Below, in pieces: positions 12,591-53,686 of a DNA stretch of 64,000 nt. The stretch lies in assembly GCF_902713615.1 (NCBI RefSeq), contig NC_052161.1:136509792-136573791 (forward strand), in the 5' to 3' direction. This stretch comes from Scyliorhinus canicula. Lineage: Eukaryota. The notes under the pieces are model-generated. The model made no database searches. It was not told the origin of the DNA and saw nothing but the letters and a program-made list of their open reading frames with translations. Position numbers and translations under genes: made by a program. Every line of letters begins with the position of its first letter. Positions within the stretch are counted from its first letter, which is position 1.

Positions 12591-13560
12591 CCCGCCAGCG
12601 TGATGTCATGAAATAAGTTTCAAAAAGTTTGACGGAAAATCCCGGCAGCGGAGCAGAGGGGCGGCAAACGGATTTTCTCGCCTGAATTGAAATGTAGTGA
12701 AAAGAAGAGAAGGGGGGGGGGGGGTTGTTGGGGGTATAGGGTGGATACGTGGGTTTGAGTAGGGTGATCATGGCTCGGCACAACATCGAGGGCCGAAGGG
12801 CCTGTTCTGTGCTGTACTGTCCTATGTTCTATTATGCCAATGCAAAGAGAATTTCAAAGTTTCTGGGACTTGCGTGGGTAAACTAGGGTGAAAGCCCAGT
12901 GCTGAGGGAGTGCGGCATTGTCAGAGGCACTGTGTTTGGAATAGGGACAACCTCCCTGTCCAGCGATGCAAATGTATCGTCAGGCATTCCATGAGCATCT
13001 GAAGGAGTGTCCTGGCCAACATTCCTTCCTCGACCTCAGTGTTGTTGGGATGGGAAAATGCTGGAAAATCTCAGCAAGTCTGGCAGCATCTGTAGGGAGA
13101 GAAAAGAGCTAGCGTTTTGAGTCCGATGACTCTTTGCTTTTCTTCAGTGTTTTTGGTTTGGTTGGATTGGATTTGTTTACTGTCAAATGTACCGAGGTAC
13201 AGTGAAAAGTATTGATCTGTCTGGACTGTACGCAGAACCTCGGTACAGGTGACAATAAACAAATCCAATCTGATCCAACCAACAACACTGAGAACAGAAT
13301 TACCACGCCATTGCTTTCTGTACGGAATTTCATGTCTATGACATTTGTTAAACTCAACAACAATCAGCAATTTGAAGTAATTAATTGTCCGTGAAGTGCT
13401 TGAAAATGCGATAATGAACATTATAAGTGTAATTCTGTCAGGATGAAAAAGTGTTTGCGTTGGATTCGACCCACATTTGCATTTAATAGAGACCAAAGTC
13501 CAAAAATAGTCAGATTTTATCAGATCACAAAAGGTCACCCCACATCAGCTGCTCAAAAAC

Positions 13561-14052: not shown

Positions 14053-15049
14053 TATTTTCTACAGTTCTGCCCCCTGCCAACATTGAAGTGAAGCCCCGTC
14101 TTCCTCACAGATGAGCACAAGCAGTCACATGGCACCATTTCAAGGGAGATCAATGTCATTCTGTCCAGTCCTCTGGGACAATAATTATCCCCAACTAAAA
14201 TCACTAATTAGACAGATTATCTGGATTTTATCACATTGCTGTTTGCCGGAGCGTGCTTTACATAAACTGGCTGACAACAGTGTCCACATTTCAAAAACGC
14301 TTGACTGCCAGTCGAGAGCTTCGGGATGCCGAGGTCATGTTAGGCGCTATAGTAATGCACATTCCTGTTGTTTCCCGGTTCGAGACTCCACTGTCGCATG
14401 ATGTCAATGAGTATTAAGTTGTTGCAATTAGTGTACTCCCTGTACTGACCATGGAGACCATTGGCAGTGCTGCTGAAGCACTGATATCTTTAAACAATAG
14501 GGAACATCTTGATAGGCTCAAAGTATCCTTTGAGCATTTGGATAGTAACACACGAGGTTCGTGCATGGATTTCCAGCAGCGAGCAGAATGGGGAGACATT
14601 TAACGAGGACCATTCCCACCCAACAGCAGCGTTTGATGCATTCAGTCCTTTAATAACTTTACTTCCATCCTTTGCCATTTATTATTGAACGCAGCTCTAA
14701 CAGATTCAATGCCGGGGAGCAGGTCAGAGTAATAGGAAGACTACATGAGAGATTTTACCAGCCATTTGTCAAGGAGGGCAGCCGAGAAGAAAGATAATCA
14801 TTTCCAAGTGACGCTGTTAAGTGGCTGGAAAATAGTGCCCCCCTTTTTATATTCATCAGACCCTCCCTAAAGTCCGTACTGAACTGTACCTGCATTCAGG
14901 AGCTAGTTGCTTGATTTACAACTTAAGAGGGAAGGATTTGTTTAGTGTTGGAGTCTCTGAGGCCGGGATCAAATGGGGGTCCCAACCCTGCGTTGTGTCA
15001 GAAACAGTTATGTGATACGATTTTCCAAAGAATGGCCGACCGTCGGTCA

Positions 15050-15885
15050 ATAATAATAATCTTTATTATTGTCACAAGTAGGCTTACATTAAGTACTGTG
15101 AAAGTCCCCTCGTCACCACATTCCGGCGCCTGTTCGGCATCAAATTCACCTAACAGCACGTCTTTCGGGACTGTGGGAGGAAACCGGAGCACCCGGAGGA
15201 AACCCACGCAGACACGGGGAAAACGTGCAGACTCCACACAGTCAGTGACCCAAGTGGGAATCGAACCTGGGACTCTGTGGGCGGGATTCTCCGTTGGCAC
15301 CGGTGTGGTTGGTGTGACGCCAGTCGCGGGCCGCTCCAGGCGGCCGGCCCACCGATTCCCCGGCCCGGATGGGCCGAGCGGCCGTATGAAAAGAGCTGAG
15401 GCCTGCCGCCGCCGTTCTAACCTGCTCTGGGCCAGCGGGACCTCGGAGTGCAAGGGTCGGGTGGCGGCCTTTGGAGGGGGGGGGGGTTCTAACCCTGGAG
15501 GGGAGCCTCCGATGTGGCCTGGCCCGCGATCAGGGCCCACCGATTGGCGGGCCGGCCACTTTGGCTGGGGGCTCCTTTCCTACGCGCCGGCCCCTGTAGT
15601 CCTGCGCCATGTTGCGTTGGGGCCGGCACGTTGAAGGAGGCCACTGCGCATGTGCATGTTGGCGCCGGCGCCACTGCACATGCGTGGATCCCGCGGCGCA
15701 CAGTTCGCGCCGGGATCTGCAGCGAACCATTCCAGTGCCGTGCTGGCCCCCTGGAGGCGCCAGAATTAGTCGTGGTAGCAGCTCGTTCACGCCGTCGTAA
15801 AACGCGACAGTGTGGACACTCTGCGGAGAATCCCGCCCAGTAGCTGTGAAGCAATAGTGCTAACCGCTGCGCTACCGTGCCACCC
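15050..15885 (-). mobile_element. V-SINE interrupted by a MITE
   Basis: The SINE halves flank 15279-15838. Confidence 0.85.
15279..15838. mobile_element. GC-rich MITE (PIF/Harbinger-like)
   Basis: TIR gggcgggattctccg / cggagaatcccgccc. Confidence 0.8.
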
Positions 15886-16596
15886 TCTACACAGAGTTTC
15901 AATAAGTGCTTCTGTCTATGTGCTCAGGTGAAACCACAGTTAATGCCCACCACTTGCATATAAGTAATGTGTCCAGAGGGCGGGCTCGCCGGGAGGCTGT
16001 TGTGGGGGAGGGAGTGGATTGGGGCCGGGGGGGGGGGGGGGGGGGGGAGGGCCCTTCCTGGTGACTGGAATATTCCAATTGGCCTGGGTGAATTGGCTTA
16101 ACTGACCATCTGCCGATCGGAGTTGGTCAGCTGTCCTCTCCCCAACTTGGGCTATGAGTAAACGACGCAGACGTGGGACTGTGCTGGCAAACCAGCAGGC
16201 CGATTGCAGCAGGAAAGGCCTGGCTACCCCGAAGCAGTTTAAAACCTCTTCCCAGGAGTTCATACCGGTGCTTCTGTCTGTTCATGCAGGGTGAGCATGG
16301 AGTTTGAGAGTTCTGCATCTTTTAATTTTCTAATATTTTTGACAAACGTACTGGATTGTAACAGTGGTGTTAATTGGGTATTAACCAAGACTTCTCCTGT
16401 GCTCAATGGGATGTGGGCAAGTTCACCATTTGTTACCCCATCCCGAATTGCACCCGAGTAGCTTTCTCGGCCATTTCAGAGTCAACCACACTGCCCTGGG
16501 TCTGGAGTCACGTGTTGGCCCAGACTGGGTAAGGACGGCAGATTTCCTTCCCCAAAGGACTTTAGTGAACCAGATGGATTTTTATGAGAATCTCTG

Positions 16597-17356: not shown

Positions 17357-17510
17357 TGAGACTTCCGGTGGCGGCGATGACGTAGGAAGCTGCACATTTG
17401 GGAGCTCCCGATTCAAACCGACTTTACGGCTCTTATCAGAGCCCAAAACGGAATTTTTTTCGACGTCTCCCGGTGGGAGAAGGTGTGCTGGTCGACTTTC
17501 TCCGCATTTC

Positions 17511-18354
17511 ATGACTCAAACTCGGAGTGGGAGGGGGGAAAAAACGGCAGCAGCTCCCAGAAAAAACGGGGGAAGGATTCCAAGATGGCGGCCGGCGGAG
17601 CACCAGAGGTGTGGAGGCTGTGGGCCCAGGAGCAGCAAGCTGCTCTCCTGCGCTGTTTTGCAGATTTCAAGGCTGAGGTGCTGAGCTCTCTGCAGGAAAC
17701 GAACAGAAGGCTGTCGGAGATTCAGACGACCCAGGGTGCTGACATCCAGGCGTTGCAGGCACAGGCCACTGAACGAGAGGAGGAGGCCGTGGTCCTCGTG
17801 AGTAATGTGGAGGGGCACGAGGCACTCCATAAGAAGTGGGAAGACCGCTTCGAGGAGCTTGATCACCGCATGAGGCGGAAGAATCTGAGGATCTTGGGCC
17901 TTGCGGAGGGGCTGGAGGGGTCGGATCTGACAACCTACGTGGCCACGATGCTGAACTCGCTAGTGGGGGCCGGGTCTTTCTATCTGCCCCTGGAGCTGGA
18001 GGGAGCACACAGGGTGCTGGCCAGGAGGCCTAAGGAGAACGAACCCCCGCGTGCGGTGCTGGTGAGGTTCCACCGGTTCAGTGATCGGGAGTGCGTGCTG
18101 TGCTGGGCCAAGAAGGTGAAGAACAGCTTTTGGGAGAATGGGGTAGTACGGATCTACCAGGATTGGAGTGCGGAGGTGGCTAAGCGGCGGTCCGGGTTTA
18201 ATCGGACGAAGGAGGTGCTCTATAAGAAGTAGATAAAGTTTGGAATGTTGCAGCCTGCGCGCCTGTGGGTAACTTATTTGGATTGGCATTATTATTTTGA
18301 TTCCCCGGAGGAGGCGTGGGCCTCCGTGCGGACGGAGAAACTGGATTCGAACTA
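17511..18354 (+). pseudogene. L1 ORF1p (coiled coil plus RRM/CTD), disrupted
   Basis: Motifs RRKNLRILGLAEGLEG, AHRV, PRAVLVRF and RIYQD, then IKFGMLQPARL after a premature TAG at 18230-18232. Confidence 0.9.
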
Positions 18355-18983
18355 GGGGTTGGGAGTTGCGGGGTCGGTTGTAATGCTTTATTGCTGGTTT
18401 TTGCTGTTGCTGCGTTTTCTTTTTCTGTACTTTTGTAATTTTGATATGGTTATTTATTGGGATGTTCTGTTTTTTTGTTGGGGGGGGCATTGTTTGAGTT
18501 TTGTATCTTGCGGGGGGGGGGGGGGTTTGTTGTATTCTATGTCGGGTTGGGGGTATGGAGTGGGGCTGGTATTTGGGAGCTGCGTCAGAAGGGTGTGGTG
18601 GGGCAGTGCGAAAGCGCGGGCTTTCCTCTGGTTTCCCGCGCTGCAGGGCTGGGGGGGGGTGGAGATGATGACGGGAGCGGTGCCTGGAGGAGGGACAGGA
18701 TGGGGGATGATCCCACTTTGGGAAGGGTTGGGTTTTTGGCGGGAGTTGCCGGGGTCAGCAGAAGTTAGCTGACCCACGGAAGTACAATGGAGGACGGTTC
18801 GCGGCTAGGAGGGTTCCTAGCCTGGGGGGTGGGGGAGGGGGGGTGGAAAGGGGAATACCGGGTTGCTGCTGGCAGGGTCAGGAAGGAGCTGGTGGGGGCT
18901 GGGGGGACAGAGGTGAGGTGTTGTCGCTGTGGGGACTGGGTCGGGCGGGGGGGTGCTGGCCTGGGGCGGGCAGTCAACGGGCT

Positions 18984-21900
18984 ATGGCTAGTCGGTAGGG
19001 TTGGGGGGGGGGGGGCCTCTGATCCGGTTGGTCACCTGGAATGCGAGAGGATTGAATGGGCCGGTGAAGCGGTCGAGGGTACTTGCTCATCTGAGGGGGC
19101 TCAAGGCAGATGTGGCAATGCTTCAGGAAACCCACCTGAAGGTGGCGGACCAGGTCCGTCTGAGGAAGGGGTGGGTGGGGCAGGTTTTCCACTCTGGGTT
19201 GGATGTGAAGAACCGGGGAGTGGAGATTCTGGTGGGGAAAAGTGTGTCGTTTGAGGCATCGGAGGTGGTGACGGATAAGGGGGGTAGGTATGTTATGGTT
19301 AGGGGCAGGCTACAAGGAGAGACGGTGGTACTTGCTAGTGTGTATGCCCCAAATTGGGACGATGCGGGCTTTATGAGGCGTAATTTGGGACGGATCCCGG
19401 ATCTGGAGGCGGGAGGTCTGATCATAGGGGAGGGGGGGGGACTTCAATACGGTGTTGGATCCTTCACTGGATCGGTCCAGTTCAAGGACGGGTAGGAGGC
19501 CGGCGGCGGCCAAGGTCTGAGGGGGTTTATGGACCAGATGGGAGGGGTGGACCCATGGAGGTTTGTGAGGCCGAGGGCACGCGAGTACTCTTTCTTCTCT
19601 CATGTACATAGGGTTTATTCTCGGATAGACCTCTTCGTGGTGAGTAGGGGACTGAGTCCGAGAGTGGAGGAGGCCGAATATTCGGCCATTGCAATCTCTG
19701 ACCATGCTCCGCATTAGATGGAGTTGACGATGGGGGAGGTGCGGGACCAACGTCCGTTGTGGCGGTTGGATGTGGGGTTGTTGGTGGAGGAGGAGGTGTG
19801 TAGGAGGATCCGGGCAAGTATTATGGGGTACCTCGAGGTGAATGATACGGGGGACGTCCAGGTGAGGATGGTCTGGGAAGCCCTGAAGGCAGTAATTCGT
19901 GGGGAGCTGATATCCATCCGGGCACACAGGGAGAGGAGCGAGAGGAGTGAGAGGGATAGACTGGTGGAAAAGATGCTGGAGGTGGACAGGAGGTACGCGG
20001 AGGCACCAGAGGAGGGATTGTTGGGGGAGAGGCGCAGCCTACAGGCTAAATTTGATTTGCTGACCACTAGAAAGGCGGAGGCACAGTGGAGGAAGGCACA
20101 AGGGGCAGTGTACGAACATGGTGAAAAGTCGAGTAGGATGCTGGCTCATCAGCTCCGCAAGCGGAATGCAGCTAGGGAAATTGCTGGAGTGAGAGATAAT
20201 AGTGGGAATGTGGTGCGGAAGGGGGTAGAGGTGAATGAGGTCTTCAAGGGCTTTTACGGGGAACTGTACCGGTCGGAGCCAACGGGGGAGAGGGGGGGAA
20301 TGGAGAGGTTTCTCGACGGGCTATCTTTCCCGAAGGTGCAGGAGGAGCAGGTGGAGGGGTTGGGGGCGCCGATTGAGCTGGGGGAGCTGGTTAAGGGGAT
20401 CAGGCAGATGCAGTCAGGGAAGGCGCCGGGGCCGGATGGGTTCCCGCTGGAATTTTATAAAAAGTTTGTGGACCTAGTGGGCCCCCTGCTGGTGCGGACA
20501 CTTAATGAGGCGTGGGAAGGGGGGGACTTTGCCCCCGACGATGTCGCGGGCGCTGATTTCTTTAATATTAAAGAGGGACAAGGACCCCCAGCAGTGTGGT
20601 TCATACAGGCCCATATCTCTCCTCAACGTGGATGCCAAGGTGCTGGCAAAAATCCTGGATAGAGGACTGTGTGCCAGGGGTTGTACACGAGGACCAGACA
20701 GGTTTTGTTAAGGGAAGGCAGCTGAACACGAATGTGCGGAGGTTGCTGAATATCGTCATGATGCCGGCGATTGAGGGGGAGGCTGAGATAGTGGTGGCGC
20801 TGGATGCGGAGAAGGCCTTTGATAGAGTGGAGTGGGGTACCTATGGGAGGTGTTGGGGAGGTTTGGATTTGGTGAAGGGTTTATTAGATTGGTGAGGCAG
20901 CTATATGAGGCACCGATGGCGTGTGTGACCACGAATGGGAGGAGGTCGGAGTACTTCCGGCTTTACCGAGGGACCAGGCAGGGTTGCCCCCTGTCCCCCT
21001 TGTTGTTTGCACTGGCAATCGAGCCGCTGGCGATGGCGTTGAGGGAGTCAGGGAGGTGGAGTGGCTTGGTGCGGGGTGGGGAGGAACATAGGGTGTCGTT
21101 GTATGCCGGTGACCTGCTACTGTATGTGGCGGACCCGGTGGGAGGGATGCCGGGGGTGATGGAGCTGCTAGCTGAGTTTGGGACCTTTTCAGGCTATAAA
21201 CTAAATCTAGGCAAGAGTGAGGTGTTTGTGGTCCACCCTGGGAACCAGGAGGAGGGAATTGGTAGGCTCCCGCTTAGGAGGGCAGGGGACAGTTTTAGGT
21301 ACCTGGGGGTGCAGGTGGCCAGGGACTGGGGGACTCTTCACAAGCATAATTTCACCAGGCTTGTGGATCAGATGGAGGAGGAGTTCAAGAGGTGGGACAT
21401 GCTGCCATTGTCGTTGGCGGGGAGGGTGCAGTCCGTCAAAATGACGGTGCTTCCGAGGTTCTTGTTCCTCTTTCAGTGCCTGCCCATCTTCATCCCCAGG
21501 GCCTTCTTTAGGAGGGTGACTAGCAGTATTTTGAGCTTTGTGTGGGCACATGGGACTCCGAGAGTGAAGAGGGTTTTCCTGGAGCGAGGGAGGGATAGAG
21601 GCGGGCTGGCGCTGCCCAACCTTTTGGGGTATTATTGGGTGGCCAATGTGCGTAAATGGGTGATAGGGGTGCGGCGTGGAAAAGAATGGAGATGGCGTCT
21701 TGTAGAGGTACGAGCCTGGGTGCCATGGTAATGGCGCCGTTGCCGCTCTCCCCTAAGAGGTCTACCACGAGCCCGGTGGTGGCGGCGACCCTGAGAATCT
21801 GGGGACAGTGGAGACGGCATAGGGGGGAAACAGGGGGCTCGATGGAGACTCCATTAGGTGGAAATCATCGGTTCATCCCGGGGAACACTGATGGGGGATT

Positions 21901-22740
21901 TAGGGGGTGGCATAGGGTGGGCATCAGTAAATTGAGGGACCTGTTTATTGGCGGGAGGTTTGCAGGCCTGGGGGAACTGGAAGATAAATTTGGCCTTCCC
22001 CAAGGGAACATGTTCAGATACCTGCAGGTAAAGGCGTTTGCTAGGCGACAGGTGGAGGAATTTCCTTTGCTGCCCTCGCGGGGGGCGATGGACAGAGTGC
22101 TTTCGGGGTGTGGGTCGGAGAGGGGAAGGTGTCTGACATCTATAAGGTAATGCAGGAGGTGGAGGAGTCGTCAGTGGAGGAGCTGAAGGCTAAATGGGAG
22201 GGGGAACTAGGGGAGCAGATAGAGGACGGGACTTGGGCGGATGCCTTGGAGAGAGTCAACTCTTCCTCTTCATGTCCAAGGCTTAGTCTCATCCAATTTA
22301 AGGTGCTGCACCGGGCCCACATGTCTGGGACTAGGATGAGTAGGTTCTTTGGGGGTGAGGACAGGTGCACCAGATGTTCGGGGAGTCCAGCGAACCATGC
22401 CCATATGTTCTGGGCATGTCCGGCACTGGAAGAATTCTGGAAGGGGGTGGCGGGGACGGTGTCGAGTGTGGTTGGATCCAGGGTCAAACCAGAGTGGGGA
22501 CTCGCGATTTTTGGAGTTGCGGCGGAGCCGGGAGTGCAGGAGGCGAAAGAGGCCGGTGTGTTCTGGGCTTTGCATCCCTAGTAGCCCGGCGGGGGATCTT
22601 GATGCAGTGGAAAGATGCAAGGCCCCCAAGTGTGGAGACCTGGATCAGTGACATGGCGGGATTTATAAAATTGGAGAGGATCAGTACAAGGGTTCTATAA
22701 ACGGTGGCAGCCTTTTCTGGACTTTCTGGCTCAAAGATAG
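18984..22740 (+). pseudogene. L1 ORF2p (APE endonuclease, RT, C-terminal CCHC), frameshifted
   Basis: Motifs VTWNARGLN, LQETH, SRID, SDH, GKAPGPDG, YRPISLLN, LDAEKAFD, GTRQGCPLSP and CxxC...HMFWAC. Catalytic YADD is mutated to YAGD (about 21102), and there are several frameshifts and stops. Confidence 0.92.
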
Positions 22741-22989: not shown

Positions 22990-25552
22990 GGGTCGATGGC
23001 TGTGAGACACCAGAAACAGATGGGAAACCTGTCTGGAGGATTACGAGGGCAATCACATAGTTGCTGCACCTGTGGTGGTAGGACACGCCCAAGGCAAGGC
23101 TGCCAAAATCGGCACAACGCACACCACCCAGGCTGGAAGACAAAGCCACCTCAGGCTTCACAAATCAACTGGCCCAAACGGGAAGGGTTAATACAATTGA
23201 ATTTCATCACTGCCCCCAATGTGGCCCCAATCCAGATCAAACTCCACCTGGACCTGGAAGTAGACACAGGAGCTGCTGTCTTTCAGACAACTCACAGTGG
23301 GCACTTTGCCCCTGAGCCTGAAGTATACCCAGACCAGGTTGACCACTACGCATCTTGGGAACCATGATGACACTGGTCACACGGGCAGTAGACGGTCCGA
23401 CTCGCATTAATAGTAGTATAAAGAGCAGGACATAGTCTGCTGGGAAGAGACTGGCTGCAACATATTTTTCAACTTATACAAAGCCGTAGGGAAGTATCCT
23501 GCGGTATTCCAGGAAGGCCTCAGAAAAATTAAAGGTGCTAGAGCGAACATTAATGTAGACCTGGAGACCCTACCCAAGTACTTCAGGGCAAGGCCACTCC
23601 CCGATGCCCTACTCACTATAGAAGAGATCGAATTGCAGCGACTGGAGAACCTGGGCATCATATAGTTGGTACAGTTCTTAAAATGGGCTACGCCAGTGGT
23701 GCCAGTATTGAAGCCTGACATGTCTTTGCGGTGACTATAAGAAGACCATCAACAAAGCCTCCCGCCGAGGCCGGCACGCCATACCATGCATTGAGGACCT
23801 ATGCGCAAAACTAGATATGAGCCACCCTTACCTCCAGCTGGAGCTTGATGTGGCATTTAGAAAATATGTAACTATTAATGCCCACAAGGGGGTTATACGA
23901 ATATACTTGTCTACCTTTCGTAATTTCAGCAACGTACGCTATTTTCCAAAGGGTGATGTAAAACATCCTTCAAGGATTGTCCAGCGTGGCTATATACCTG
24001 GATGGTGTATTAATCTCAGGAGCAACCAAGAAGGAACACCTGGAAAATTTGCAGGAAGTCTTATGCCAATTCTCCGACACAGGCGTCAGCTTTAAAAGAG
24101 AAAAATGCGTTTCAGGCAACCGAGGTATCGTATCTCGGGACAGTAGCGACACGGACGGCCTACGCACCAGAGAAGACAAGGTAAAGGCCATAAAAGGAAG
24201 TACGACATCAGGAAATACAGCGGAACGAAAGGTGTTCCTCAGCCTCATAAATTATTATAGAGATTTATACCTAAACTAGACGTCTTGCTGGCACCCTTGC
24301 ACACCTGGTTAAAACGGAATAAGAAGCGGTCATGGTGAACACCACAAGACAAAGCTTTTGAGAAGGTGAAGAAGAAACTATCATCTAATACAGGGTTTTT
24401 AAAAGTGTGGTTCGCAATCAACGAGCGGGTGATGGGAGGTTTGTGGAGCGATCACTTGCGCCGTACCCTCGGGGGTCCCAATCGTAGAAGACCCCAGTGG
24501 CCACTACCGGCTTTTACATGGAGAATGGCGGCCGCTGCCAACGTTTATATGAAAATAAATGGAGGTGGTGTAGAGCCCTCCGGCCAGAAGTGGCAGCAGA
24601 GAGCGGGTCATGTGTCCTGCACACACACTTGACGTCAAGCGCCCTCCAGGTACCTGCTTTTGGTGCCGAATCACAAAGCAGTGTTGCTTCCATTTTCCAG
24701 CTGCTGGCGGGCAAGGTAAGTGAACTGTGAAGATGAATGGTTTTCGTAAAAGTAAGAAATTGCCTGAGGCTCAAAATAGGCAGTTTACCTATTGGACAGG
24801 ATCTCACAACAGAATCTATTGGAGAGAGCTGCTCAGGAGAGTCCAGAGCAGGACAGAGCAGTGCTAGTCTTAGCTTTGAGAGCTCCAGGGCCTCTGGTGA
24901 AAGTCAACAAAGAAGAAACTTAACTCGGGCACAAAGCAGTACGAAGATGATTTCTTGAGGTCTGGTTTTGTCAATTGCGCCAATGCAAGTAAAGATGCAA
25001 AGCCCATGTGTGTTATATGCAGGGAAGTACTGGCAAATGAGAGGAGAGGTTTCAGATTTTGAAAGGGAAGAGGTGGATGAAAAATTCCTTTTGGGGGTGT
25101 TGAGATCCCAGGATCAGTTATTAACTTAGAGCGAAAGACTACACTGCTGTATCTGACCTGTAACACCACATTAAAAATGCACCAAAACCCATGAGGCTGT
25201 CAGCATTCTGGTATAGCATCTCCCAGGAGTACCCAGTGCTGAGTAAAACAAGCATTTTGTTTCTATTGCCCTTCACGACGACCTACCCGCGCGAATTTGG
25301 ATTTTCCTTTTTCATAAAAACCAAAATCGCAAAAGGAACCGGCTGAACTCTGCATGTGATATGTGCATTGGCCTCTCCTCCTTTCACCCTGACCATGAGG
25401 ACCAAGCAAGCTCCCCTTTCGCATTAAAGGTAAGGGAATGTGGCGTGCGTCGCAAGGGTGGGATGGCGTGGGTTTCGAACATCATCCAGTTGGCAAAGAT
25501 GGGTCCCAGGAGAATTAGTTTGAAAATCACTGATCAAACATATTAGCACACC
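22990..25552 (+). mobile_element. Degenerate Gypsy internal region (gag knuckle, protease, RT), interrupted by a hAT
   Basis: Motifs LEVDTGAAV, WATPVVPVLKPD, DY-K-TIN, HPYLQLELD, YVTINAHKG, VAIYLDGVLISG and HLENLQEVL. Pol resumes (LLAH) after the hAT. Confidence 0.85.
24391..25532 (+). mobile_element. Internally deleted hAT (Charlie/Buster, ZBED5-like) transposon
   Basis: TIRs cagggtttttaaaa / tttgaaaatcactg and a degenerate 8-bp TSD atctaata/atcaaaca. Transposase relics DDFLRSGF..KPMCVICREVLANE (about 24945-25040) and the hATC motif LSAFWYSISQEYPVLSKTSILFLLPFTTTY..E.GFS (about 25195-25290). Inserted in Gypsy pol. Confidence 0.88.
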
Positions 25553-26753
25553 CCAGTAGAGTTGGAGTCTATTGCTGTTGCCACAATAGTGACTTTATTT
25601 TCGTATTGTAAATAAACTACGTTAGCCTTCCTGCACGTGTCTCTTGGATTATCACTGGAAGTTTGATCAGTACTGGGAAAAGGGAACTTCTGACTGTGTG
25701 AAACAAGAGGATAGAGGTTAAAGGGAAAATAAAACACTGATGTGAGGGGGTCGCTGGTTAGATCTCCCAGAAGGCAGCAAGATAACTGGTCAGATCTCCC
25801 AGAAGAGGGTGGACAAGGCCTGAGAAACATTACAATGATCGAAATTTTGTGACCATGCTGGAGGCCTGATGGGTGTCAATGAAATTGGGCAGGACGTAGC
25901 AGCAATTTTGGCTGGAACTGCAGTGTTAAGGCACGGCTGATGGCTAATTCTGTGCTGCCCACATCCCAAAGGGAAACCTGAAACAGCTGCCAAAACAGTT
26001 TTTGCAATTTGTATGTTATGAGGGTGTTTTATGCAATCAGAAAATGACGTCTCCAACCAATTGTGATGATTATCATTAAAGTTTATGAAAAATAAAGAAA
26101 ATGTTTAAAAATTACTCTTTAACAGAAGAGTGGCTTCATATAGTTAACAATACGTTAAAACAGTTCCAAAAGATATTAACTTCAACTGCACTTGGTTAAC
26201 TTTCCCTTTTCTGCTTGGTAACAGTCCTTGTAGATTTTTAAATCTACAGAATGCAATAATTTCCCCAAGTATTGCCTTTTTGCTGTTGGGGTGTGCTCAG
26301 AGGCTGAGAGCGACTGGTTTTCCAGGTCACATGGCCCAAATCCTCCCCTAAACTGCATGTGACCCTGGGGTGACATCGCCCCAGAATATATTTGTGGCTC
26401 CCAGAGGTGGTGGTCGGCCTTTGCCAAGTCTCTTCCATCGCCATAGACTTGGTTGAAGCTTCCTCTGCATGGGGTGCGACCAGTCCCCCTAAAAATGGTA
26501 ACCAGGATCCCGTTTACATAGGGCCCCCATTTCCATATTAAGAGGGTTCTTTTCAGAAAATGCTGTTATTTACTGTCAAACAGACACCCCACACCTCCAA
26601 ACATGTCTGGAAAACACAAGCACACCTATCCACAATGGAATTCCAGGTGTTGGTTCTGGAATTCTTCTCTCTAGCTCCGACCTCCTTCAGGGATGGAATT
26701 TTACAGCCCTGTTGTGTGTGTGTGGTGGTTGGGGGAGGGGGGGCGCAGCCGTA

Positions 26754-26788
<35 letters not shown>

Positions 26789-27038
26789 ACCCCAATAGTA
26801 AACCAAAAGGAGGGTTCGGATTGGCAACAATCTCTAAAGAGCCTCTCCGGCATCAGGGTAGAGATGTCGTCAAGAGGAAGGCAGGGTTGGGTCAGGGTGC
26901 ACTGACCCCCAGTCCCATCACCACATCCCCAAAACCGCCCCCATGCCCTCTCCCCCCACGAATAATCACATTCCATACATGGGACAAGTCCCAAAGGGAG
27001 AGCAATTGGAATACGCCCAGTGAGAAGAAAGCGTGTCC

Positions 27039-27044
27039 TTTATT
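27039..27044 (-). terminator. Polyadenylation signal AATAAA downstream of miR-34a
   Basis: tttatt on the plus strand, about 300 nt 3' of the hairpin. Confidence 0.4.
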
Positions 27045-27337
27045 GCGAAGCACATTTTTCCACAGGTTAACATCCATTAGAAAAAATAAGAACCAGTAAT
27101 GTTTGGGTTACTAGCGGAAACCAAACCTCGAAAATGTGCATTGGCCCAACATTTACCACATCAAATCTTTTATGTTTCTTGTTCCTGTATTGAAATATTT
27201 ACTCTCAAGGAGTACCTTTCCCTCCCACTCAGCCGCCTGTTATTATAGCGAAGAATTAAAAAAAATAAGTAGGTTATTCGAGAACATCAAAGGTGCAACG
27301 TCACAAAGTGGGGAGTAGCCAAGGGAGAGTTTGCGTT

Positions 27338-27446
27338 GGGCCGGATACAGTGAAGTGTTTCTGTGGCAGTATACTTGCTGATTGCTTTTTCGCAATGCAC
27401 ACAACAACCAGCTAAGACACTGCCAAAGAAACGCCCACATTTGGCC
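27338..27446 (-). ncRNA. MIR34A: microRNA precursor miR-34a (5p arm 27425-27404; 3p arm about 27384-27362)
   Basis: The reverse complement of 27404-27425 is TGGCAGTGTCTTAGCTGGTTGT, identical to vertebrate miR-34a-5p. The opposite arm reads CAATCAGCAAGTATACTGCCAC (miR-34a-3p type). Flanks GGCCA...GTTTCTT and AGAA...GGCCC match the mammalian precursor. Basal UG at -14/-13 and apical UGUG are present. Confidence 0.98.
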
Positions 27447-28899
27447 AGTGAAAAGGCTTCCCTTATCCTTGTACCTCTCTCCCCACTCGCTCGTCATGAG
27501 TTGAGGCGACGATTGCAGCTGCTGCCCAAAATAGTTTGTGAGTTCGAGCCAGTTCCGGACTCTCGTTAACCCGCCCTGCGGAGAATCCAAATTGCAACAG
27601 CTGGCCAAAGAAGGCACGATCAAACGCCGGCCCAGCCAATCGGAGAGAGATACCCACCCTGCAAATAAGCTTGTTTAAAACCTTCACTCTTCACCAAACT
27701 CTTTATTTTTCCAGGACTCAAGCAGGTTTTCACGGGACCGTTTTGCCAAACGGGATGTCGCAAATTGGTGCGTTCAGTCCGAACATCGGGAATCAGCATC
27801 TAAAGAAATCAGACATTTCATTAATGACAGGTTGCTCCCTTGTTTCGCAAACAGTTTTACTTCACCAGTCCCCATCCCTGCTCTTGGTACCAGCAAGCTG
27901 GGAGATTTACTAAAGCCCCGGATCCTTCCCTGGTGGAAGCCAAACTCCTGTGACAGAGCGGAGCAGGCAACATGGAAGCCAAGTATTTTTAACTAACGTT
28001 CGCCTGGCTTCCTTGGGACGCGTCTCTCTGGCGGGTTACAGATCTACAGGTGCGGAGGCCCCTCAGCTGTGAGCTTGTGATGCAACCCCTGTTAGTGAGT
28101 ATGGGCAGGCTATTCAACCATTCCGGCATCACAGGCAAGACTAATTGTGTCCACGAGCAAGAGTTCACACAAGTACGCAGTTCCAGCAGCGAGACGACAT
28201 TGACTCAAACCCCCCCCCCCCCCCTTGCCCAAGATAGACAAATCTCAGCAACGCAACTTCCACCCACTCAAACCTGCCAAATTTAGACAGGCTCCTATGT
28301 GAAATGAAAATCGCTTATTGTCACGAGTAGGCTTCAATTAAGTTACTGTGAAAAGCCCCTAGTCGCCACATTCCGGCGCCTGTTCGGGAAGGCTGTTACG
28401 GGAATCGAACCGTGCTGCTGGCCTGCCTTGGTCTGCTTTCAAAGCCAGCGATTTAGCCCAGTGTGCTAAACAGCCCCTGTATGTCAAATTAGACCAAAAA
28501 AAAAGTGGGATGTAGGTGTCGCTGTCTAGGCCAGCGTTTGTTACCCACCCCTAATTGCCCCTGAGAAAGTGGTGGTGAACCATCTTTGTGAATCGTTGCA
28601 GTTCATGTGGTGTAGGTACACCCACGGTGCTGTTAGGGAGTTCTAGGATTTTGACCCAGCAACAGTGAAGGAACGGCGATATAGTTCTAAGTCAATAACA
28701 ACTTACATTCATGTCGCACCTTTAACGTAATAAAACATCCTAAAGCGCTTCACAGGAACATTATAAAATAAAATATGGGACATCAAACGGCAACAGAAGA
28801 TATCAGGTCAGCTGACCAAAGGCCTGGACAAAAAGGTAGGTTATAAGAAGTGTGTGAAAGGAGGCAAGTGTGGTAGAGTTGAAGGATGGAATGAAAGAA

Positions 28900-29210
28900 T
28901 TTATAGCGTTTAAGGAGGCCATTCGGCCCATCGGGTCTGCACCGGCCCTTGGAAAGAGCACACTACTTAAGCCCATGCCTCCACCCGATGCCGTAGCCTA
29001 GTAACCCTACCTAATGCTTTTGGACACTATGGGGCAACTTATCATGGCCAATCCACCTAACCTGCACATCTTTGGAATGTGAGAGGAAACTGGAGCAGCC
29101 GGAGGAAACCCACACAGAAAAGGGGAGAAAGTGCAAACTCCGCAGAGACAGTCACCCAAGGCCGGAATTGAACCCGGGACCCTGGAGCTGTGAGGCAGCA
29201 GTGCCACCGT
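28900..29210 (-). mobile_element. V-SINE with CR1 tail
   Basis: V-domain and tail. Confidence 0.85.
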
Positions 29211-29262
29211 TGTAGGTCAGGAACTCCAGAGCTGAAGGCCTAGGCAGCAGAAGCATGGTTAC

Positions 29263-30237
29263 GGTTATAACCCGCACGGGACCTATGGGGTAGAAGCAAT
29301 TAGCCTCCATGTGAGCCTTGTTCAGTATGGGCTGCCCCATTGAGGGTCGGGGAGCCCATGGACTCTCTAATAACCTGTAAGACAAGTTTCGACCAGTTTT
29401 GGAACCGACACCCCAGAGACCTAAAATCTGGAGAGTATTGTACAAACCATAACTTTGTAATAAAACCAGTTTCTATTAGCCACCCGTCTCGGACTCATCT
29501 GTTGTCCCTAAACTGGCAACGAGGATATAAGTGGAGCTACTGACCATCAGACGGACAACCACGTCCTCTGCACTACAAGATTAAGGCTGGAATTTATTTT
29601 TGCAATTCAGAATTTTGTTATTCAGAGGTTTGATGCGGCTATTGAGGATTGAACTCAGTACGCTGAACATCTGTGCTACTTTTTTTGGCCGAATGGTATG
29701 ACCGGTGAAGACCGACAGACGGTAGTCCCTTCACCCGCCTGTGGGGCCCAGATTTCTGGGGAGATAAAAAGCCTGATGCATCCCGCAGCCCCAGAAATCG
29801 AAGACTTTCAAAGAACTGGTGACCCTGGTTGCACAGCATTATAAAGGCACGGTGGCGCAGTGGGTTAGCACTGCTGCCTCATGGCGCCGAGGTCCCAGGT
29901 TCGATCCCGGCTCTGGGTCACTGTCCGTGGGGAGTTTGCACATTCTCCCCGTGTTTGCGTGGGTTTCGCCCCCACAACCCAAAAGATGTGCAGGCTAAAT
30001 GGATTGGCCACGCTAAATTGCCCCTTTATTGGAAAAAATTAATTGGGTACTCTAAATTAAAAATAATTAAAATAACGGCAGGCCATCAGACATTGTGCAG
30101 AGATCACCTGTAACATATAAAGGTCGGCCACTTTTGGAACTGACATCTCAGTTCTGGAGAGTATTGTACACACTATGACTTCGCAATTAAACTAGTTTCT
30201 CTTATCCACTCATCTCAGACACGCCTGTTGTCAGTAA
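29263..30237 (+). mobile_element. Internally deleted Gypsy provirus: 5' LTR, tRNA-Ser PBS, gag fragment, partial 3' LTR
   Basis: 5-bp TSD gttac (29258-29262 / 30238-30242). PBS tggcaacgaggat at about 29514-29526 (complement of the tRNA-Ser(GCT) 3' end, with CpG decay). Gag relic QYAEHLCYFF..KTFKELVTLVAQHY..PSDIVQR. 30107-30237 is similar to 29372-29511. Confidence 0.85.
29845..30072 (+). mobile_element. V-SINE, A-tail variant, inserted in Gypsy gag
   Basis: Gag reading resumes after the element. Confidence 0.88.
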
Positions 30238-30274
30238 GTTACCAATGGCGGATCAATTAAAATCAGGGAAATCA

Positions 30275-30606
30275 GCAGGTGTGTGTGACTTGGAGCGGGC
30301 TTTACAGGTGCCTGTGTTTCCAGACATCTGCTGCCCTTGTTTTTCCAGGTGGCAGAGGTCATGGGTTTGGAAGGCGCTGTTGAAGGAGCCTGGATGAGTT
30401 GCTGCAGGGCATCTTGTAGGTGGTGCACACGGCTGCCACGGTGTGCTGGTGGTGGAGGGAGTGAGTGCTGAAGGCGGTGAATGGGGTGTTAATCAAGCTA
30501 TGATGCTGAGCCTCTTGCGGAGCTGGACTCACCCAGGAAAGTGGAAAATATTCCATCACACTCCTGGCCTGTGCCTTGTAAATGGTGGCCAGGATTTTGG
30601 GAGTCA
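30275..30606 (-). mobile_element. Non-LTR (CR1/L2-group) ORF2 C-terminal fragment
   Basis: TIYKAQARSVMEYFPLSW..SLHHQHTVAAVCTTYKM. A related tail lies at about 28505-28695 (minus). Confidence 0.7.
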
Positions 30607-31182
30607 TTTCTAATGCTCCTACTCAAATGGCTGGCAGACACCGGGGAGTCAGCCATTTTTCTAGCGTTGAGCCATCTCTGAATGAAATCTCAATCTAGTA
30701 GGGCCGTGGCGAGTTAGACACCCTCCAGGTGGATTCAGAACAACGTTGGTGGAGAAGGCTGCCTGGGCCTGCACACACTCGGCTGAACAGCCCTTCACAA
30801 CAATGGCCAGAATATGCTCACTTCTGATTGTGTGTATGGGCGCTTGTTGCAAAGTTTGGAGTGTGTGACGCAAAGATATGGAAAGCATTGGGCGTGGCTG
30901 CTGTGAGTTTCCGGGTAGAAATGTCAGACATCAAACTATTCACTGGGCGCCCCTCTGGGAAATTGGCCATTTGTTCCCTTGCATTAGTTTCAAATCCCCT
31001 GTACTCCCAGGAGGTGATTATTCATTTTGCCTAAATCTTCCGTATTGCTATTTTGGAGAGAGGGGCGGGGGGAAGGAGGAGGGATGTCCCAATATCAACG
31101 AGCTTTTGACAAAGCAGCTTTCTTGGAAATGGGATGTCGCAATGTTACGCATTCCCCCAATTTTACCAGTGGGTGGCTAATT

Positions 31183-31407
31183 TCTTTTTATAAATTTAGA
31201 GTACCCAATTATTTTTTTCCAATTAAGGGGCAATTTGGCATGGCCAATCCACCTACCCTGCACATCTTTGGGTTGTGGGGGTGAGACCCACACAGACACG
31301 GGGAGAATGTGCAAACTGCACACGGACAGTGACCCAGAGCCGGGATCGAACCCGGGACCTCGGCGCCATGAGGTAGCACTGCTAACCACTGCGTCACCGT
31401 GCCCCCC
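31183..31407 (-). mobile_element. V-SINE, A-tail variant
   Basis: TSD approximately cagtgggtgg(ct/ta)aatt. Confidence 0.88.
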
Positions 31408-31912
31408 CAGTGGGTGGTAAATTGTGCATTTTTCAATCGCACATTTACAGAAGGATTTTGTGCCCAACGACAGGTCTATTTCCCCCTCGTCTCCTGAAGC
31501 CTTGCGCTGATATTGGCCACGAGGGTTCCATTTTATCCCCAATTAAAACGATTCCAACCCGCTCTTTCGGCCCATTTTTAAAATTAAACCCTGAATGAAG
31601 AGAGAAGTTGAATTGATAAAGTGCATTTCGTGGCTTCAGGATTTTCCATAACCTATGCAGCCAAACAACTACAATTGAAGTGAAAAGGGTGCCCTGACTA
31701 TAAATTGGTAAATCCACACAGTAGCTCTGCTGAAATCGGCACTTTACCCCAAAGGCAAATAAAACTGGAATAAAAAGAAAGAGGAAAACACACAGAAGAG
31801 TATTGTGTACCAGTAAATAAATAGTAAACACTTCCGCATTGGGGAACGGATAAAGGTTTCATGGCAAACTTTGAAAAGACTGTAACGTAAAGAGGAAGAG
31901 AGAGGTTTCTAC

Positions 31913-32080
31913 CTGTCTGCTTGAACAAGCTTCCTGACGCCTGTAAAGTCAATGCCGGTGACAAAGATATCTTCTGGGTCCCAAAGGGACTGCTCGTTCC
32001 CTCCTGGTTTGAATTCTGCTGCATTGTGGCATCTTCCTGAGCTACCTGCATTGAGGAGCTCACTGCTCAGCAAGCAAAGT
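31913..32080 (-). ncRNA. Candidate first exon of the pri-miR-34a host transcript
   Basis: Runs from the putative TSS to the donor CAG|GTAGAA (GT at 31912-31911). Contains an ATG at 32051, a Kozak-like GCCACAATG, and one p53 half-site GAACAAGCTT (31923-31932). Confidence 0.4.
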
Positions 32081-32160
32081 GTGCATCCAGCTGACTGTAC
32101 TTTATATACCAGTGACAGGTCAGCCTTGGCAACAACCACACCTAACTGTGAGTCACTGCA
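32078..32160 (-). promoter_or_regulatory. Candidate Pol II core promoter for pri-miR-34a
   Basis: TATATAAAG at 32108-32100 (minus) and an Inr-like CACTTT with A at 32080 (28 nt downstream). Also AP-1 TGAGTCA 32149-32155, nuclear-receptor half-site AGGTCA 32117-32122 next to an SF-1/LRH-1-like CCAAGGCTG, and E-box CAGCTG 32088-32093, all in non-repetitive DNA. Confidence 0.5.
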
Positions 32161-32247
32161 CCCTTGCATTTCAGTTCTAGACTTTTATTCCCCACTTCCT
32201 TGTCGCCCTTTTAAAGATAGACTCACATTGGGTTCAAAGTTCAACAT

Positions 32248-32708
32248 TGTGGGAGTCTGCATGTTCTCCCCGTGTCCGCGTGGGTTTCCTCCGGGTGCTC
32301 CGGTTTCCTCCCACAAGTCCCGAAAGAAGTGCTTGTTAGGTGAATTGGACATTCTGAATTCTCCCTCTGTGTACCCGAACAGGCGCCGGAATGTGGCGAC
32401 TCGGGGATTTTCACTGTAACCTCATTGCAGTGTTAATGCAAGCCTACTTGTGACAATAAAGATTATTATTCTCGATATCACAGGCTTTCAGGGCGGCACG
32501 TGACGCACAGGGACTACGGCGCAGGGGACCCGGGTTCGAATCCCGGCCCCGGGTCACTGTCCTTGTGGAGTTTGCACATTCTCCCCGTGTCTGCGTGGGT
32601 TTCACCCCCGCAACCCAAAAATGTGCAGGTTAGGTGGATTGGTCACGCTAAATTGCCCCTTAATTGGAAAAGAATGATAATTGGCTACTCTAAATTTATT
32701 TTTAAAAA
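32248..32708 (+). mobile_element. Two tandem V-SINEs (32248-32470 with tta tail; 32490-32708 with A tail)
   Basis: The second copy has a 13-bp TSD atatcacaggctt (32475-32487 / 32709-32721). Confidence 0.88.
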
Positions 32709-47992: not shown

Positions 47993-48650
47993 GGGCGGGA
48001 TTCCCCTGTACCCAGCGGGACGGAGTGGCTGAACCATTCCGGCGTTGGCCCGCCCCAAAGGTGCGGAATCTCCTTTGGCACCATGCCAACCGGGGCCGAA
48101 GGGACTCCGCCGGCCGGCGCGGGTCCCCGCATGTGCAGGAGCGTCAGTGGCTGCTGCCGTCATCCCCACGCATGCGCGGGAGGGGGGGGGGGGTTCACCT
48201 ACGCATCAGCCATCGCGGAGGCTGACACAGCCGGCGCGTAGAAAAGAGTGCCCCCCACGGCACAGGCCCACCCGCGAATCGGTGGGCCCCGATCACGGGA
48301 CAGGCCAACGTGGGGGCACCCCCCGGGGCCAGATTGCCCCGCGCCCCCCCCCCCCCCCCCCAGGACCCCGGTGCCCGCCCACGCCGCCAGGTCCCGCCGG
48401 TAGGGGACTTAGTCTAATTTACGCCGGCGGGACGGGCAAAGAACCAGCGGGACTTCATCCCATCGCGGGCCGGAGAATCGCCGGGGGGGGGGGGGGGGGG
48501 GGGGGGGGCACTGCTAGTGGCCGCCGACCGGCGCGATTCCCGCCCCCGCCGAATCTCCGGTGCTGGAGGATTCAGCGGCCGGTGGGGGCGGGATTCATGC
48601 CGCCCCCCCGGCGATTCTCCAACCCGGCGGGGAGTCAGAGAATCCTGCCC
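47993..48650. mobile_element. GC-rich MITE (PIF/Harbinger-like)
   Basis: TIR gggcgggattc / gaatcctgccc with flanks act/att. Confidence 0.8.
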
Positions 48651-49626
48651 ATTATTACCCCACTCCTCCCTGTTTCTGGAGCTGCACCAAAACTGCTTTT
48701 GTAGGTTCAGAAAACAAGTTGTTGAAATGTCTGTCTCCTGGCCACAAGTGAGCTCTCGGCTTCAAACGACACAGCGAGCACCAGGCGGCTGTGAGAGAGA
48801 TTTCTTCCTCAGGCAATATTGTACGCACGGTGCTGGGTTGGCAGACGTTTATTCCTGGTTTAGTTTTTACTCTCGCTCTGGCACATCACAAAGGTTTCCG
48901 CACACAGAGCTGAAGCAGCCGATGGCTTTCCTCCGGGTGTCCCAGTTTCCTCCCACAAGTCCCAAAAGATGTGCTTGTTAGGTAATTTGGACATTCTGAA
49001 TTCTCCCGCAGTGTACCCGAACAGGTGCCGGAGTGTGGCAACTAGGGGCTTTTCAAAGTATCTTCGTTACAGTTTTAATGTAAGCCGGAGCGCCCGGAGG
49101 AAACCCACGCAGACACGGGGAGAACGTGCCGACTCCGCACAGGCAGTGATCCAAGCCGGGAATCGAACTCGGGTCCGTGGCACTGTGAAGCAACAGTGCT
49201 AACCACTGTGCCACCCTGCAGGGCGAATGGCCGACTTATGCTCTTATGTCTATGTCTTATCGTTATATGATCTAACAAGGCTGAGAACCTTAAAATCAAG
49301 GTATTGTCGGCATGGGGCCAATGTATGAGTAAGGATAGAGGCAGCAGGGTTTGGATAAGGTCATGCTGTCGATATCAGGAGGGTTTAACTATCTGCTTCA
49401 TTCCCCTCCACCCCTAACCAACCAACCAATCCCATTCCCATCCTCGGTTAAGATGGACGTTAATGGTTTTGCCACTTGCGTTTCTCCCAAGGAAAAGGAA
49501 TTAATTTTGTGTTTCAAGAAACGTGCTGCTAAAATTCATCAGGCCAGCAGCGAGCTCTGTGGGTGGTGTGATGTGATGACAGGCTAAAACCAATCGGACG
49601 TTCTAGTTCCGTGTTCTTCAAAGACA

Positions 49627-52574: not shown

Positions 52575-52960
52575 CCCGCCCAGCCCCAGTGTGCCCTCCT
52601 TCCCCATCCCCATTGTGCCCTATCCCCTCACTCCCATCCTGCCCTCTCCCCCCCACCCCCAGTGTGCCCTCTCCCCCCCCACCCCCAGTGTGCCCTCTCC
52701 CCCCCAGCCCCAGTGTGCCCTCTCCCCCCCCAGCCCCAGTGTGCCCTCTCCCCCCCCAGCCCCAGTGTGCCCTCTCCCCCCCAGCCCCAGTGTGCCCTCT
52801 CCCCCCCACCCCCAGTGTGCCCTCTCCCCACCACCCCCAGTGTGCCCTCTCCCCCCCCACCCCCAGTGTGCCCTCTCCCCCCCAGCCCCAGTGTGCCCTC
52901 TCCCCCCCCCCCCCAGCCCCAGTGTGCCCCCCCCCCCAGCACCAGTGTGTGCCCTCCCTC
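52575..52960 (+). repeat. C-rich minisatellite, about 25-bp unit cccccagccccagtgtgccctctcc
   Basis: Direct reading of the sequence. Confidence 0.93.
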
Positions 52961-53320: not shown

Positions 53321-53686
53321 GGGTCGCGAAGGTCGGCAGGCGTGGGTCGCGAAGGTCGGCCGGGTTAGGTCGCGAAGGTCGGCCGGGTTAGGTCGCGAAG
53401 GTCGGCCGGGTTAGGTCGCGAATGTCGGCCAGCGTGGGTCGCGAAGGTCGGCCGGGTTAGGACGCGAAGGTCGGCCGGGTTAGGTCGCGAAGGTCGGCCG
53501 GTTAGGTCGCGAAGGTCGGCCGGGTTAGGTCGCTCAGGTCGGCCGGGTTAGGTCGCGAAGGCCGGCCGGGTTAGGTCGCGAAGATCAGCCGGGTTAGGTC
53601 GCGAAGGTCGGCCGGGTTAGGTCGCGAAGGTCAGCCGGGTTAGGTCGCGAAGGTCGGCCGGGTTAGGTCGCTCAGGTCGGCCGATA
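53321..53686 (+). repeat. 23-bp tandem repeat ggtcgcgaaggtcggccgggtta (about 16 copies), hAT right subterminal
   Basis: Direct reading. CpGs are largely intact. Confidence 0.95.

What the first reader, a model, noticed from the sequence alone, without database searches (positions are those of the whole stretch)
27338..27446. miR-34a locus hidden in a TE-dominated window
Seen: the minus strand carries the exact miR-34a-5p sequence, a matching 3p arm, conserved precursor flanks, basal UG and apical UGUG, plus a CNNC-like CGGC about 19 nt downstream. Established: miR-34a is the p53-induced tumour-suppressor miRNA that lies between GPR157 and H6PD in mammals. It is the only confident host gene in 64 kb and is invisible in the ORF track.
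Basis: partly seen in the sequence, partly recalled or inferred. Interest (0 to 1): 0.7.

Follow-up and report, generated by a model that had tools for sequence, protein, structure and literature searches.

The report
Catshark miR-34a microRNA gene
This is the shark copy of miR-34a, a small regulatory RNA gene long known in humans as a p53-switched brake on cell growth; it looks intact and well conserved, and finding it here is ordinary.

Summary
On the minus strand, 27357-27432 matches the Rfam mir-34 model above its curated threshold (63.3 bits against 53.4, E 4e-12). It is the only mir-34 hit on the minus strand in the 64 kb; the sole other one is its own reverse complement. The 109-nt stretch folds into a roughly 35-bp hairpin (-49.3 kcal/mol, z -6.1). 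The 5p arm (27425-27404) is the 22-mer printed as miR-34a in 206 papers.

The best reading is the catshark orthologue of miR-34a (MirGeneDB Mir-34-P1). The mature sequence is identical and the hairpin is solitary, whereas the miR-34b/c and miR-449 paralogues are clusters. An untested lead is another human-1p36 gene noted on the same piece.

Three things were not shown:
- GPR157/H6PD synteny: no exon of either gene was found in the window.
- p53 control: no response element above chance.

The scan also holds a sister note (s1-237860) on this stretch. This is an already known gene kind, so interest is low.

The parts
27338..27446 (-). Pri-miRNA hairpin with basal segments (109 nt). The stem is about 35 bp, and an outer GGCC/GGCC clamp closes the base.
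   Evidence: Fold gives -49.3 kcal/mol, z -6.12, with 0 of 200 shuffles as stable. Pair table.
27357..27432 (-). Match to the Rfam mir-34 precursor model, full length.
   Evidence: RF00456 at 63.3 bits against a gathering score of 53.4, E 4.1e-12. It is the only mir-34 locus in the window at E<=1.
27404..27425 (-). Predicted mature miR-34a-5p (22 nt, the guide strand).
   Evidence: The 22-mer co-occurs with 'miR-34a' in 206 papers. Position confirmed.
27362..27384 (-). Predicted miR-34a-3p (passenger arm). Its ends are inferred from 2-nt overhang geometry.
   Evidence: It pairs with the 5p arm, with 22 pairs in the upper stem. From my memory of the human 3p arm, 20 of 22 positions are the same.
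27438..27439 (-). Basal UG motif at -14/-13 from the 5p Drosha cut.
   Evidence: U is unpaired and G is paired, so the motif lies at the single-strand/double-strand junction.
27400..27403 (-). Apical UGUG motif at the stem-loop junction.
   Evidence: U44 is paired and G45, U46 and G47 are unpaired.
27340..27343 (-). CNNC-like CGGC, 19 nt downstream of the inferred 3p cut.
   Evidence: It lies slightly outside the canonical 16-18 nt position, which I give from knowledge.
27039..27044 (-). First AATAAA downstream of the hairpin. It is a candidate poly(A) signal of the primary transcript, by inference only.
   Evidence: No reads were available to test it.

Best explanation
This is the catshark orthologue of the vertebrate miR-34a gene (MirGeneDB Mir-34-P1), a solitary microRNA hairpin on the minus strand.

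Inferred mechanism, from the established animal miRNA pathway:
1. RNA polymerase II transcribes a non-coding primary transcript from higher to lower coordinates.
2. Drosha/DGCR8 recognises the roughly 35-bp stem, helped by the basal UG and the apical UGUG. It cuts about 13 nt above the basal junction, at 27425 on the 5p side and about 27362 on the 3p side.
3. Dicer removes the 16-nt loop.
4. The 5p strand (27425-27404) is loaded into Argonaute and represses mRNAs that carry matches to its seed.

Shown here: the sequence, the fold, the family match, the motif positions and the solitary state.

Inferred only: transcription, the cut sites, strand choice, the targets, and any induction by p53.
For: - Rfam mir-34 matches the full model above its curated threshold, E 4e-12.
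- The minus-strand match beats its own reverse complement (36.4 bits) and an overlapping lower-scoring match to another family of the same clan.
- The hairpin folds to -49.3 kcal/mol, z -6.1.
- The 5p 22-mer is the one printed as miR-34a in 206 papers.
- The Microprocessor motifs are in register with that 5p start.
- There is no second mir-34 hairpin within 27 kb to the left or 36 kb to the right. Mir-34-P1 is reconstructed as a single gene, and P2 and P3 as clusters.
- The hairpin region has no copy elsewhere in the window, so it is not part of a repeat family seen here.
- MirGeneDB covers a catshark and the elephant shark, and MIR-34 predates vertebrates.
- Lead only: a scan note places SZRD1, a human 1p36 gene, 20.5 Mb away on the same piece.
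Against: - There is no expression evidence.
- Micro-synteny is untested. No GPR157 or H6PD exon was detected among ORFs of 100 aa or more, and short exons would be missed.
- No p53 response element stands above chance: 1 match with 2 mismatches against 2.4 expected.
- The CNNC lies 19 nt out rather than 16-18 nt.
- The sequences of the paralogues used for discrimination come from my knowledge, not from a tool.
Confidence: 0.92

Rival explanations
1. It is a different paralogue of the family: a member of the miR-34b/c (Mir-34-P2) or miR-449 (Mir-34-P3) locus that happens to carry a miR-34a-like mature sequence.
For: All family members share the seed, and the Rfam mir-34 model covers 34a, 34b and 34c, so alone does not separate them. 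Micro-synteny was not testable.
Against: The 5p arm is identical over 22 nt to miR-34a. From knowledge, 34b, 34c and 449 each differ at several positions outside the seed. No partner hairpin lies anywhere in the 64 kb, although P2 and P3 are clusters. The overlapping lower-scoring match from the same clan lost to mir-34.
Confidence: 0.04
2. It is a silent or decaying duplicate, for example one carried by a transposon or a segmental copy, and the working miR-34a gene lies elsewhere.
For: The window is rich in LINE and SINE copies. No expression data could be obtained.
Against: Both arms, the lower stem and the processing motifs are intact. The hairpin region has no self-similarity to the repeats of the window. 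From knowledge, sharks have had no extra whole-genome duplication that would supply a spare copy.
Confidence: 0.03
3. It is a chance hairpin with no biological role.
For: None beyond the absence of read data.
Against: Rfam E-value 4e-12. Fold z-score -6.1 with 0 of 200 shuffles as stable. Exact 22-nt identity to a known miRNA.
Confidence: 0.01

Closest known systems
Human/mouse MIR34A (MirGeneDB Mir-34-P1), the p53-induced miRNA at human 1p36 between GPR157 and H6PD
   Same: The 5p mature sequence is identical. The hairpin architecture is the same, with 5p as the likely guide. The locus is solitary. From memory, the 3p arm is nearly identical, the lower stem is similar, and the outer GGCC clamp is shared.
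   Different: The terminal loop sequence differs, and the last two bases of the 3p arm differ (from memory of the human precursor). No p53 site was found above chance in the 36 kb upstream. The host transcript, promoter and neighbours were not determined.
miR-34b/c cluster (Mir-34-P2a/b)
   Same: Same Rfam family and the same seed.
   Different: That locus is a two-hairpin cluster, and here there is one hairpin in 64 kb. From knowledge, the mature sequences differ outside the seed.
miR-449a/b/c cluster (Mir-34-P3), intronic in CDC20B
   Same: Same Rfam clan (CL00087) and the same seed.
   Different: That locus is a cluster of 3-4 hairpins. Here the mir-34 model was kept as the best match of its clan, and no host coding gene was detected.
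Invertebrate miR-34 (for example Drosophila or Bombyx miR-34-5p)
   Same: Same ancient family, MIR-34, present before the vertebrate ancestor.
   Different: That is the single pre-duplication gene. The catshark hairpin carries the vertebrate miR-34a-type mature sequence.

Membership tests
Rfam RF00456 mir-34 precursor family | Covariance-model score at or above the curated gathering score (53.4 bits) over the full model | tested here: met
   63.3 bits, model positions 1-72 of 72, E 4.1e-12.
Bona fide animal miRNA (MirGeneDB-type structural criteria) | Imperfect hairpin with at least 16 paired positions between the two arms and a terminal loop of at least 8 nt | tested here: met
   22 pairs in the upper stem and a 16-nt apical region, at -49.3 kcal/mol.
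Bona fide animal miRNA (MirGeneDB-type read criteria) | Reads from both arms with homogeneous 5' ends and 2-nt 3' overhangs | not testable with these tools
No miRNA-seq run was listed.
Canonical Microprocessor substrate | Stem of about 35 bp, basal UG at -14, apical UGU/GUG, and CNNC 16-18 nt downstream of the cut | tested here: met
   UG at -14/-13 on the junction, UGUG at the apical junction, and a stem of about 35 bp. The CNNC is at +19, one position outside the usual window, so that one element is only approximately met.
miR-34a / Mir-34-P1 paralogue | Mature 5p sequence identical to miR-34a | tested here: met
   The 22-mer at 27425-27404 co-occurs with 'miR-34a' in 206 papers.
miR-34a / Mir-34-P1 paralogue | Single hairpin, not part of a cluster | tested here: met
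   There is no other mir-34-clan hit in the 64 kb at E<=1. P1 is single, while P2 and P3 are clustered.
miR-34a / Mir-34-P1 paralogue | Lies between GPR157 and H6PD orthologues | tested here: inconclusive
   The human order is confirmed. No exon of either gene was found among 54 ORFs of 100 aa or more, but the window covers only 27 kb and 36 kb on either side, and short exons would be missed. A scan note puts SZRD1 (human 1p36) on the same piece; that is an untested lead.
p53-induced miR-34a | p53 response element (two RRRCWWGYYY half-sites) at the promoter of the primary transcript | tested here: inconclusive
   One match with 2 mismatches at 29380-29399, against 2.44 expected by chance. The promoter itself is not located.

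The most novel reading that the evidence does not exclude
The catshark primary miR-34a transcript might be unusual in one of two ways. It might be a compact, dual-use RNA whose open reading frame runs through the hairpin (126 aa unspliced at 27243-27623; sister note s1-237860 proposes 184 aa spliced). That would make miRNA processing and translation of one molecule mutually exclusive. Alternatively, it might lack p53 control, which would date the p53-miR-34a link to after the split from cartilaginous fishes. My evidence excludes neither reading, but it gives no positive support. ORFs of this size are common in the window (107 of 90 aa or more). The proposed upstream exon lies among SINE copies. 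The absence of a p53 site is uninformative while the promoter is unlocated.
Probability: 0.04. Interest if true: 0.45.

Novelty: already known. Interest (0 to 1): 0.1.

Why it matters
It gives a correct annotation for a gene that ORF-based views cannot see. It anchors this otherwise repeat-filled stretch to the paralogon that holds human 1p36. It also shows that the miR-34a hairpin, lower stem and processing motifs included, has been held nearly unchanged since the last common ancestor of sharks and mammals. None of this is surprising, because MIR-34 is an ancient family and curated miRNA sets already cover a catshark and the elephant shark. The open question is whether p53 drives it in cartilaginous fishes, and this window alone cannot answer that.

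Tried and rejected
ARAGORN was run only beside the hairpin. Two local scripts did read the window file: a self-comparison and an index check of the fold.
2. A second run search, restricted to libraries described with 'miRNA', listed none.
3. A p53 response-element scan gave 1 match against 2.4 expected, so it is not evidence.
4. The CpG-rich block at 48-54 kb, 21-26 kb upstream, could recall the distant human exon 1. It is built of minisatellites and repeat copies, so I do not call it a promoter.
5. The CpG-rich kilobase at 15-16 kb has ORFs that look like the same G/C-rich repeat and have no Pfam hit. I rejected it as a GPR157 first exon.
6. Pfam scans of 54 ORFs of 100 aa or more gave only LINE domains plus three marginal, meaningless hits.
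7. Findings searches for GPR157, H6PD, RERE, CAMTA1 and 1p36 found nothing.
8. Paper searches for Scyliorhinus together with miR-34 found no paper on the subject.

Full report
**What is there.** Read on the minus strand, 27446..27338 is a 109-nt imperfect hairpin. A scan of all 64 kb against Rfam 15 at gathering thresholds gives exactly one hit: RF00456, mir-34, at 27432..27357. It scores 63.3 bits against a gathering score of 53.4, E 4.1e-12, over the full model. The stretch folds to -49.3 kcal/mol. Dinucleotide shuffles average -29.05 (sd 3.31), giving z = -6.12, and none of 200 shuffles folds as well. With permissive filters (E<=1) the only other mir-34 signal is the reverse complement of the same hairpin, at 36.4 bits. 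One overlapping match to another family of the same clan scored lower and was dropped. The minus strand is therefore the sense strand, and mir-34 is the best family.

An index check on the fold gave the following:
- UG sits at -14/-13 from that 5' end (27439-27438), with U unpaired and G paired, which is the basal junction.
- UGUG (27403-27400) spans the apical junction.
- The upper stem has 22 pairs, and the lower stem has 11 pairs plus one bulge. Together with an unpaired U just before the 5p start, that makes a stem of about 35 bp.
- An outer GGCC/GGCC clamp closes the base.
- With a 2-nt overhang, the 3p cut falls at 27362, and CGGC (27343-27340) begins 19 nt later. From my knowledge of the Microprocessor motif literature, the CNNC window is 16-18 nt, so this element is close but not canonical.
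- From memory of the human precursor, the 3p arm matches at 20 of 22 positions, and the lower stem differs partly by paired changes. That is recollection, not a test.

**Which paralogue.** Vertebrates have three loci of this family. A supplementary table of Peterson et al. 2021 (PMC8789304) lists Mir-34-P1 as one gene, Mir-34-P2a/b as a cluster of two and Mir-34-P3a-d as a cluster of four, each on a different ancestral linkage group. PMC6353903 likewise describes Mir34a and Mir34b/c as two separate loci. Here the hairpin is alone, with 27 kb on one side and 36 kb on the other, and its mature sequence is that of miR-34a. That points to Mir-34-P1.

The human order GPR157, MIR34A, H6PD is printed in a list of 1p36 deletions. 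I could not test that order in the shark. Fifty-four ORFs of 100 aa or more gave only LINE domains (RVT_1, zf-RVT, Exo_endo_phos) and three marginal hits of no meaning. Neighbouring windows cannot be reached. Earlier scan notes call this genome a catshark. One note places SZRD1, which from my knowledge is a human 1p36 gene, 20.5 Mb away on the same piece. That is an untested lead and fits 1p36 macro-synteny.

**Surroundings.**
- There are no N bases in the window.
- At least 23% of the window is similar to another part of the window, while 27100-27700 has no such match.
- A LINE with endonuclease and reverse-transcriptase pieces lies at about 17.5-22.6 kb, and another fragment lies at 3.4-5.2 kb.
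- At least four or five copies of one SINE-like family, in both orientations, fill 28.3-32.7 kb, directly upstream of the hairpin.
- A G+C-rich, CpG-rich block at 48-54 kb consists of 28-, 25- and 23-nt minisatellites and repeat copies. I do not read it as a promoter.

'TE-dominated' is a fair description but is not quantified, because no repeat library was available.

**How it most likely works.** By the established animal miRNA pathway, the hairpin is cut out of a polymerase II transcript by Drosha/DGCR8 at 27425 and about 27362. It is then trimmed by Dicer, and the 5p strand guides Argonaute to mRNAs with seed matches. Only the substrate features are shown here. Transcription, cut sites, strand choice and targets are inferred. 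In mammals the gene is driven by p53. In this window the p53 consensus gives one 2-mismatch match, at 29380-29399, against 2.4 expected by chance. The first AATAAA downstream is at 27044.

**What could not be done.** Eighteen listed runs hold parts of 25000-30000 as contigs, and three raw oligo-dT RNA runs of the species were offered. Only local scripts read the window file. No run with 'miRNA' in its library description was listed. No paper in the held library treats miR-34 in Scyliorhinus. A cloudy catshark and the elephant shark are among the species listed in a study that uses MirGeneDB, and MIR-34 is placed before the vertebrate ancestor.

**Verdict.** This is a real, intact and ordinary orthologue of miR-34a, with confidence about 0.92. 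The rivals are another paralogue (0.04), a silent duplicate (0.03) and chance (0.01). The kind is already known, so interest is low. The scan also holds a sister note (s1-237860) on this stretch, proposing a coding frame through the hairpin. I saw nothing that lifts that idea above chance.

Noticed in passing
window 27243-27623 (-), and sister note s1-237860 (27243-32108): A 126-aa ORF starting at TTG runs through the miRNA hairpin. The window holds 107 ORFs of 90 aa or more, so the size is unremarkable. The upstream 'exon' proposed by the sister note lies among SINE copies at 31185-31387 and 32252-32678. A human pri-miR-34a peptide, miPEP133, is described in the literature, but nothing links it to this ORF.
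   Followed up: partly
window 28332-32678: At least four or five copies of one SINE-like family, 77-93% alike and in both orientations, are packed into 4.4 kb directly upstream of the hairpin. They form long inverted pairs, for example 31208-31346 with 32540-32678 (139 nt, 90% complementary). If they are transcribed within the primary transcript, they could form long double-stranded RNA.
   Followed up: no
window 29380-29399: A p53-consensus-like site lies 2 kb upstream of the hairpin, with one perfect half-site and a second with 2 mismatches. The count is no higher than chance (1 found, 2.4 expected).
   Followed up: partly
window 50033-52308: A minisatellite of about 2.3 kb has a 28-nt G-rich unit (about 60 copies by the tandem-repeat finder's 28-nt row; 56- and 68-nt higher-order periods). 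GC is 0.69 and GC skew +0.57, and it creates spurious ORFs of 834-890 aa on the minus strand. Next to it are a 25-nt C-rich array (52575-52916) and a 23-nt array (53322-53683).
   Followed up: no
window 13146-13289: A near-perfect palindrome of about 150 nt folds as a long hairpin (DNA fold -45.4 kcal/mol, z -9.0). It gives weak matches on both strands to a plant miRNA model, far below threshold (38.6 bits against 180). It is most likely an inverted-repeat transposon remnant, not a miRNA.
   Followed up: partly
window 17483-22581 (+): LINE remnant with endonuclease and reverse-transcriptase ORF pieces. It has a strong G-over-C skew, up to +0.45 at 18-20 kb.
   Followed up: no
window 48045-48700 and 14945-15900: Two copies of a very G+C-rich, CpG-rich repeat with long poly-G/poly-C runs. 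They mimic CpG islands in the composition profile.
   Followed up: no
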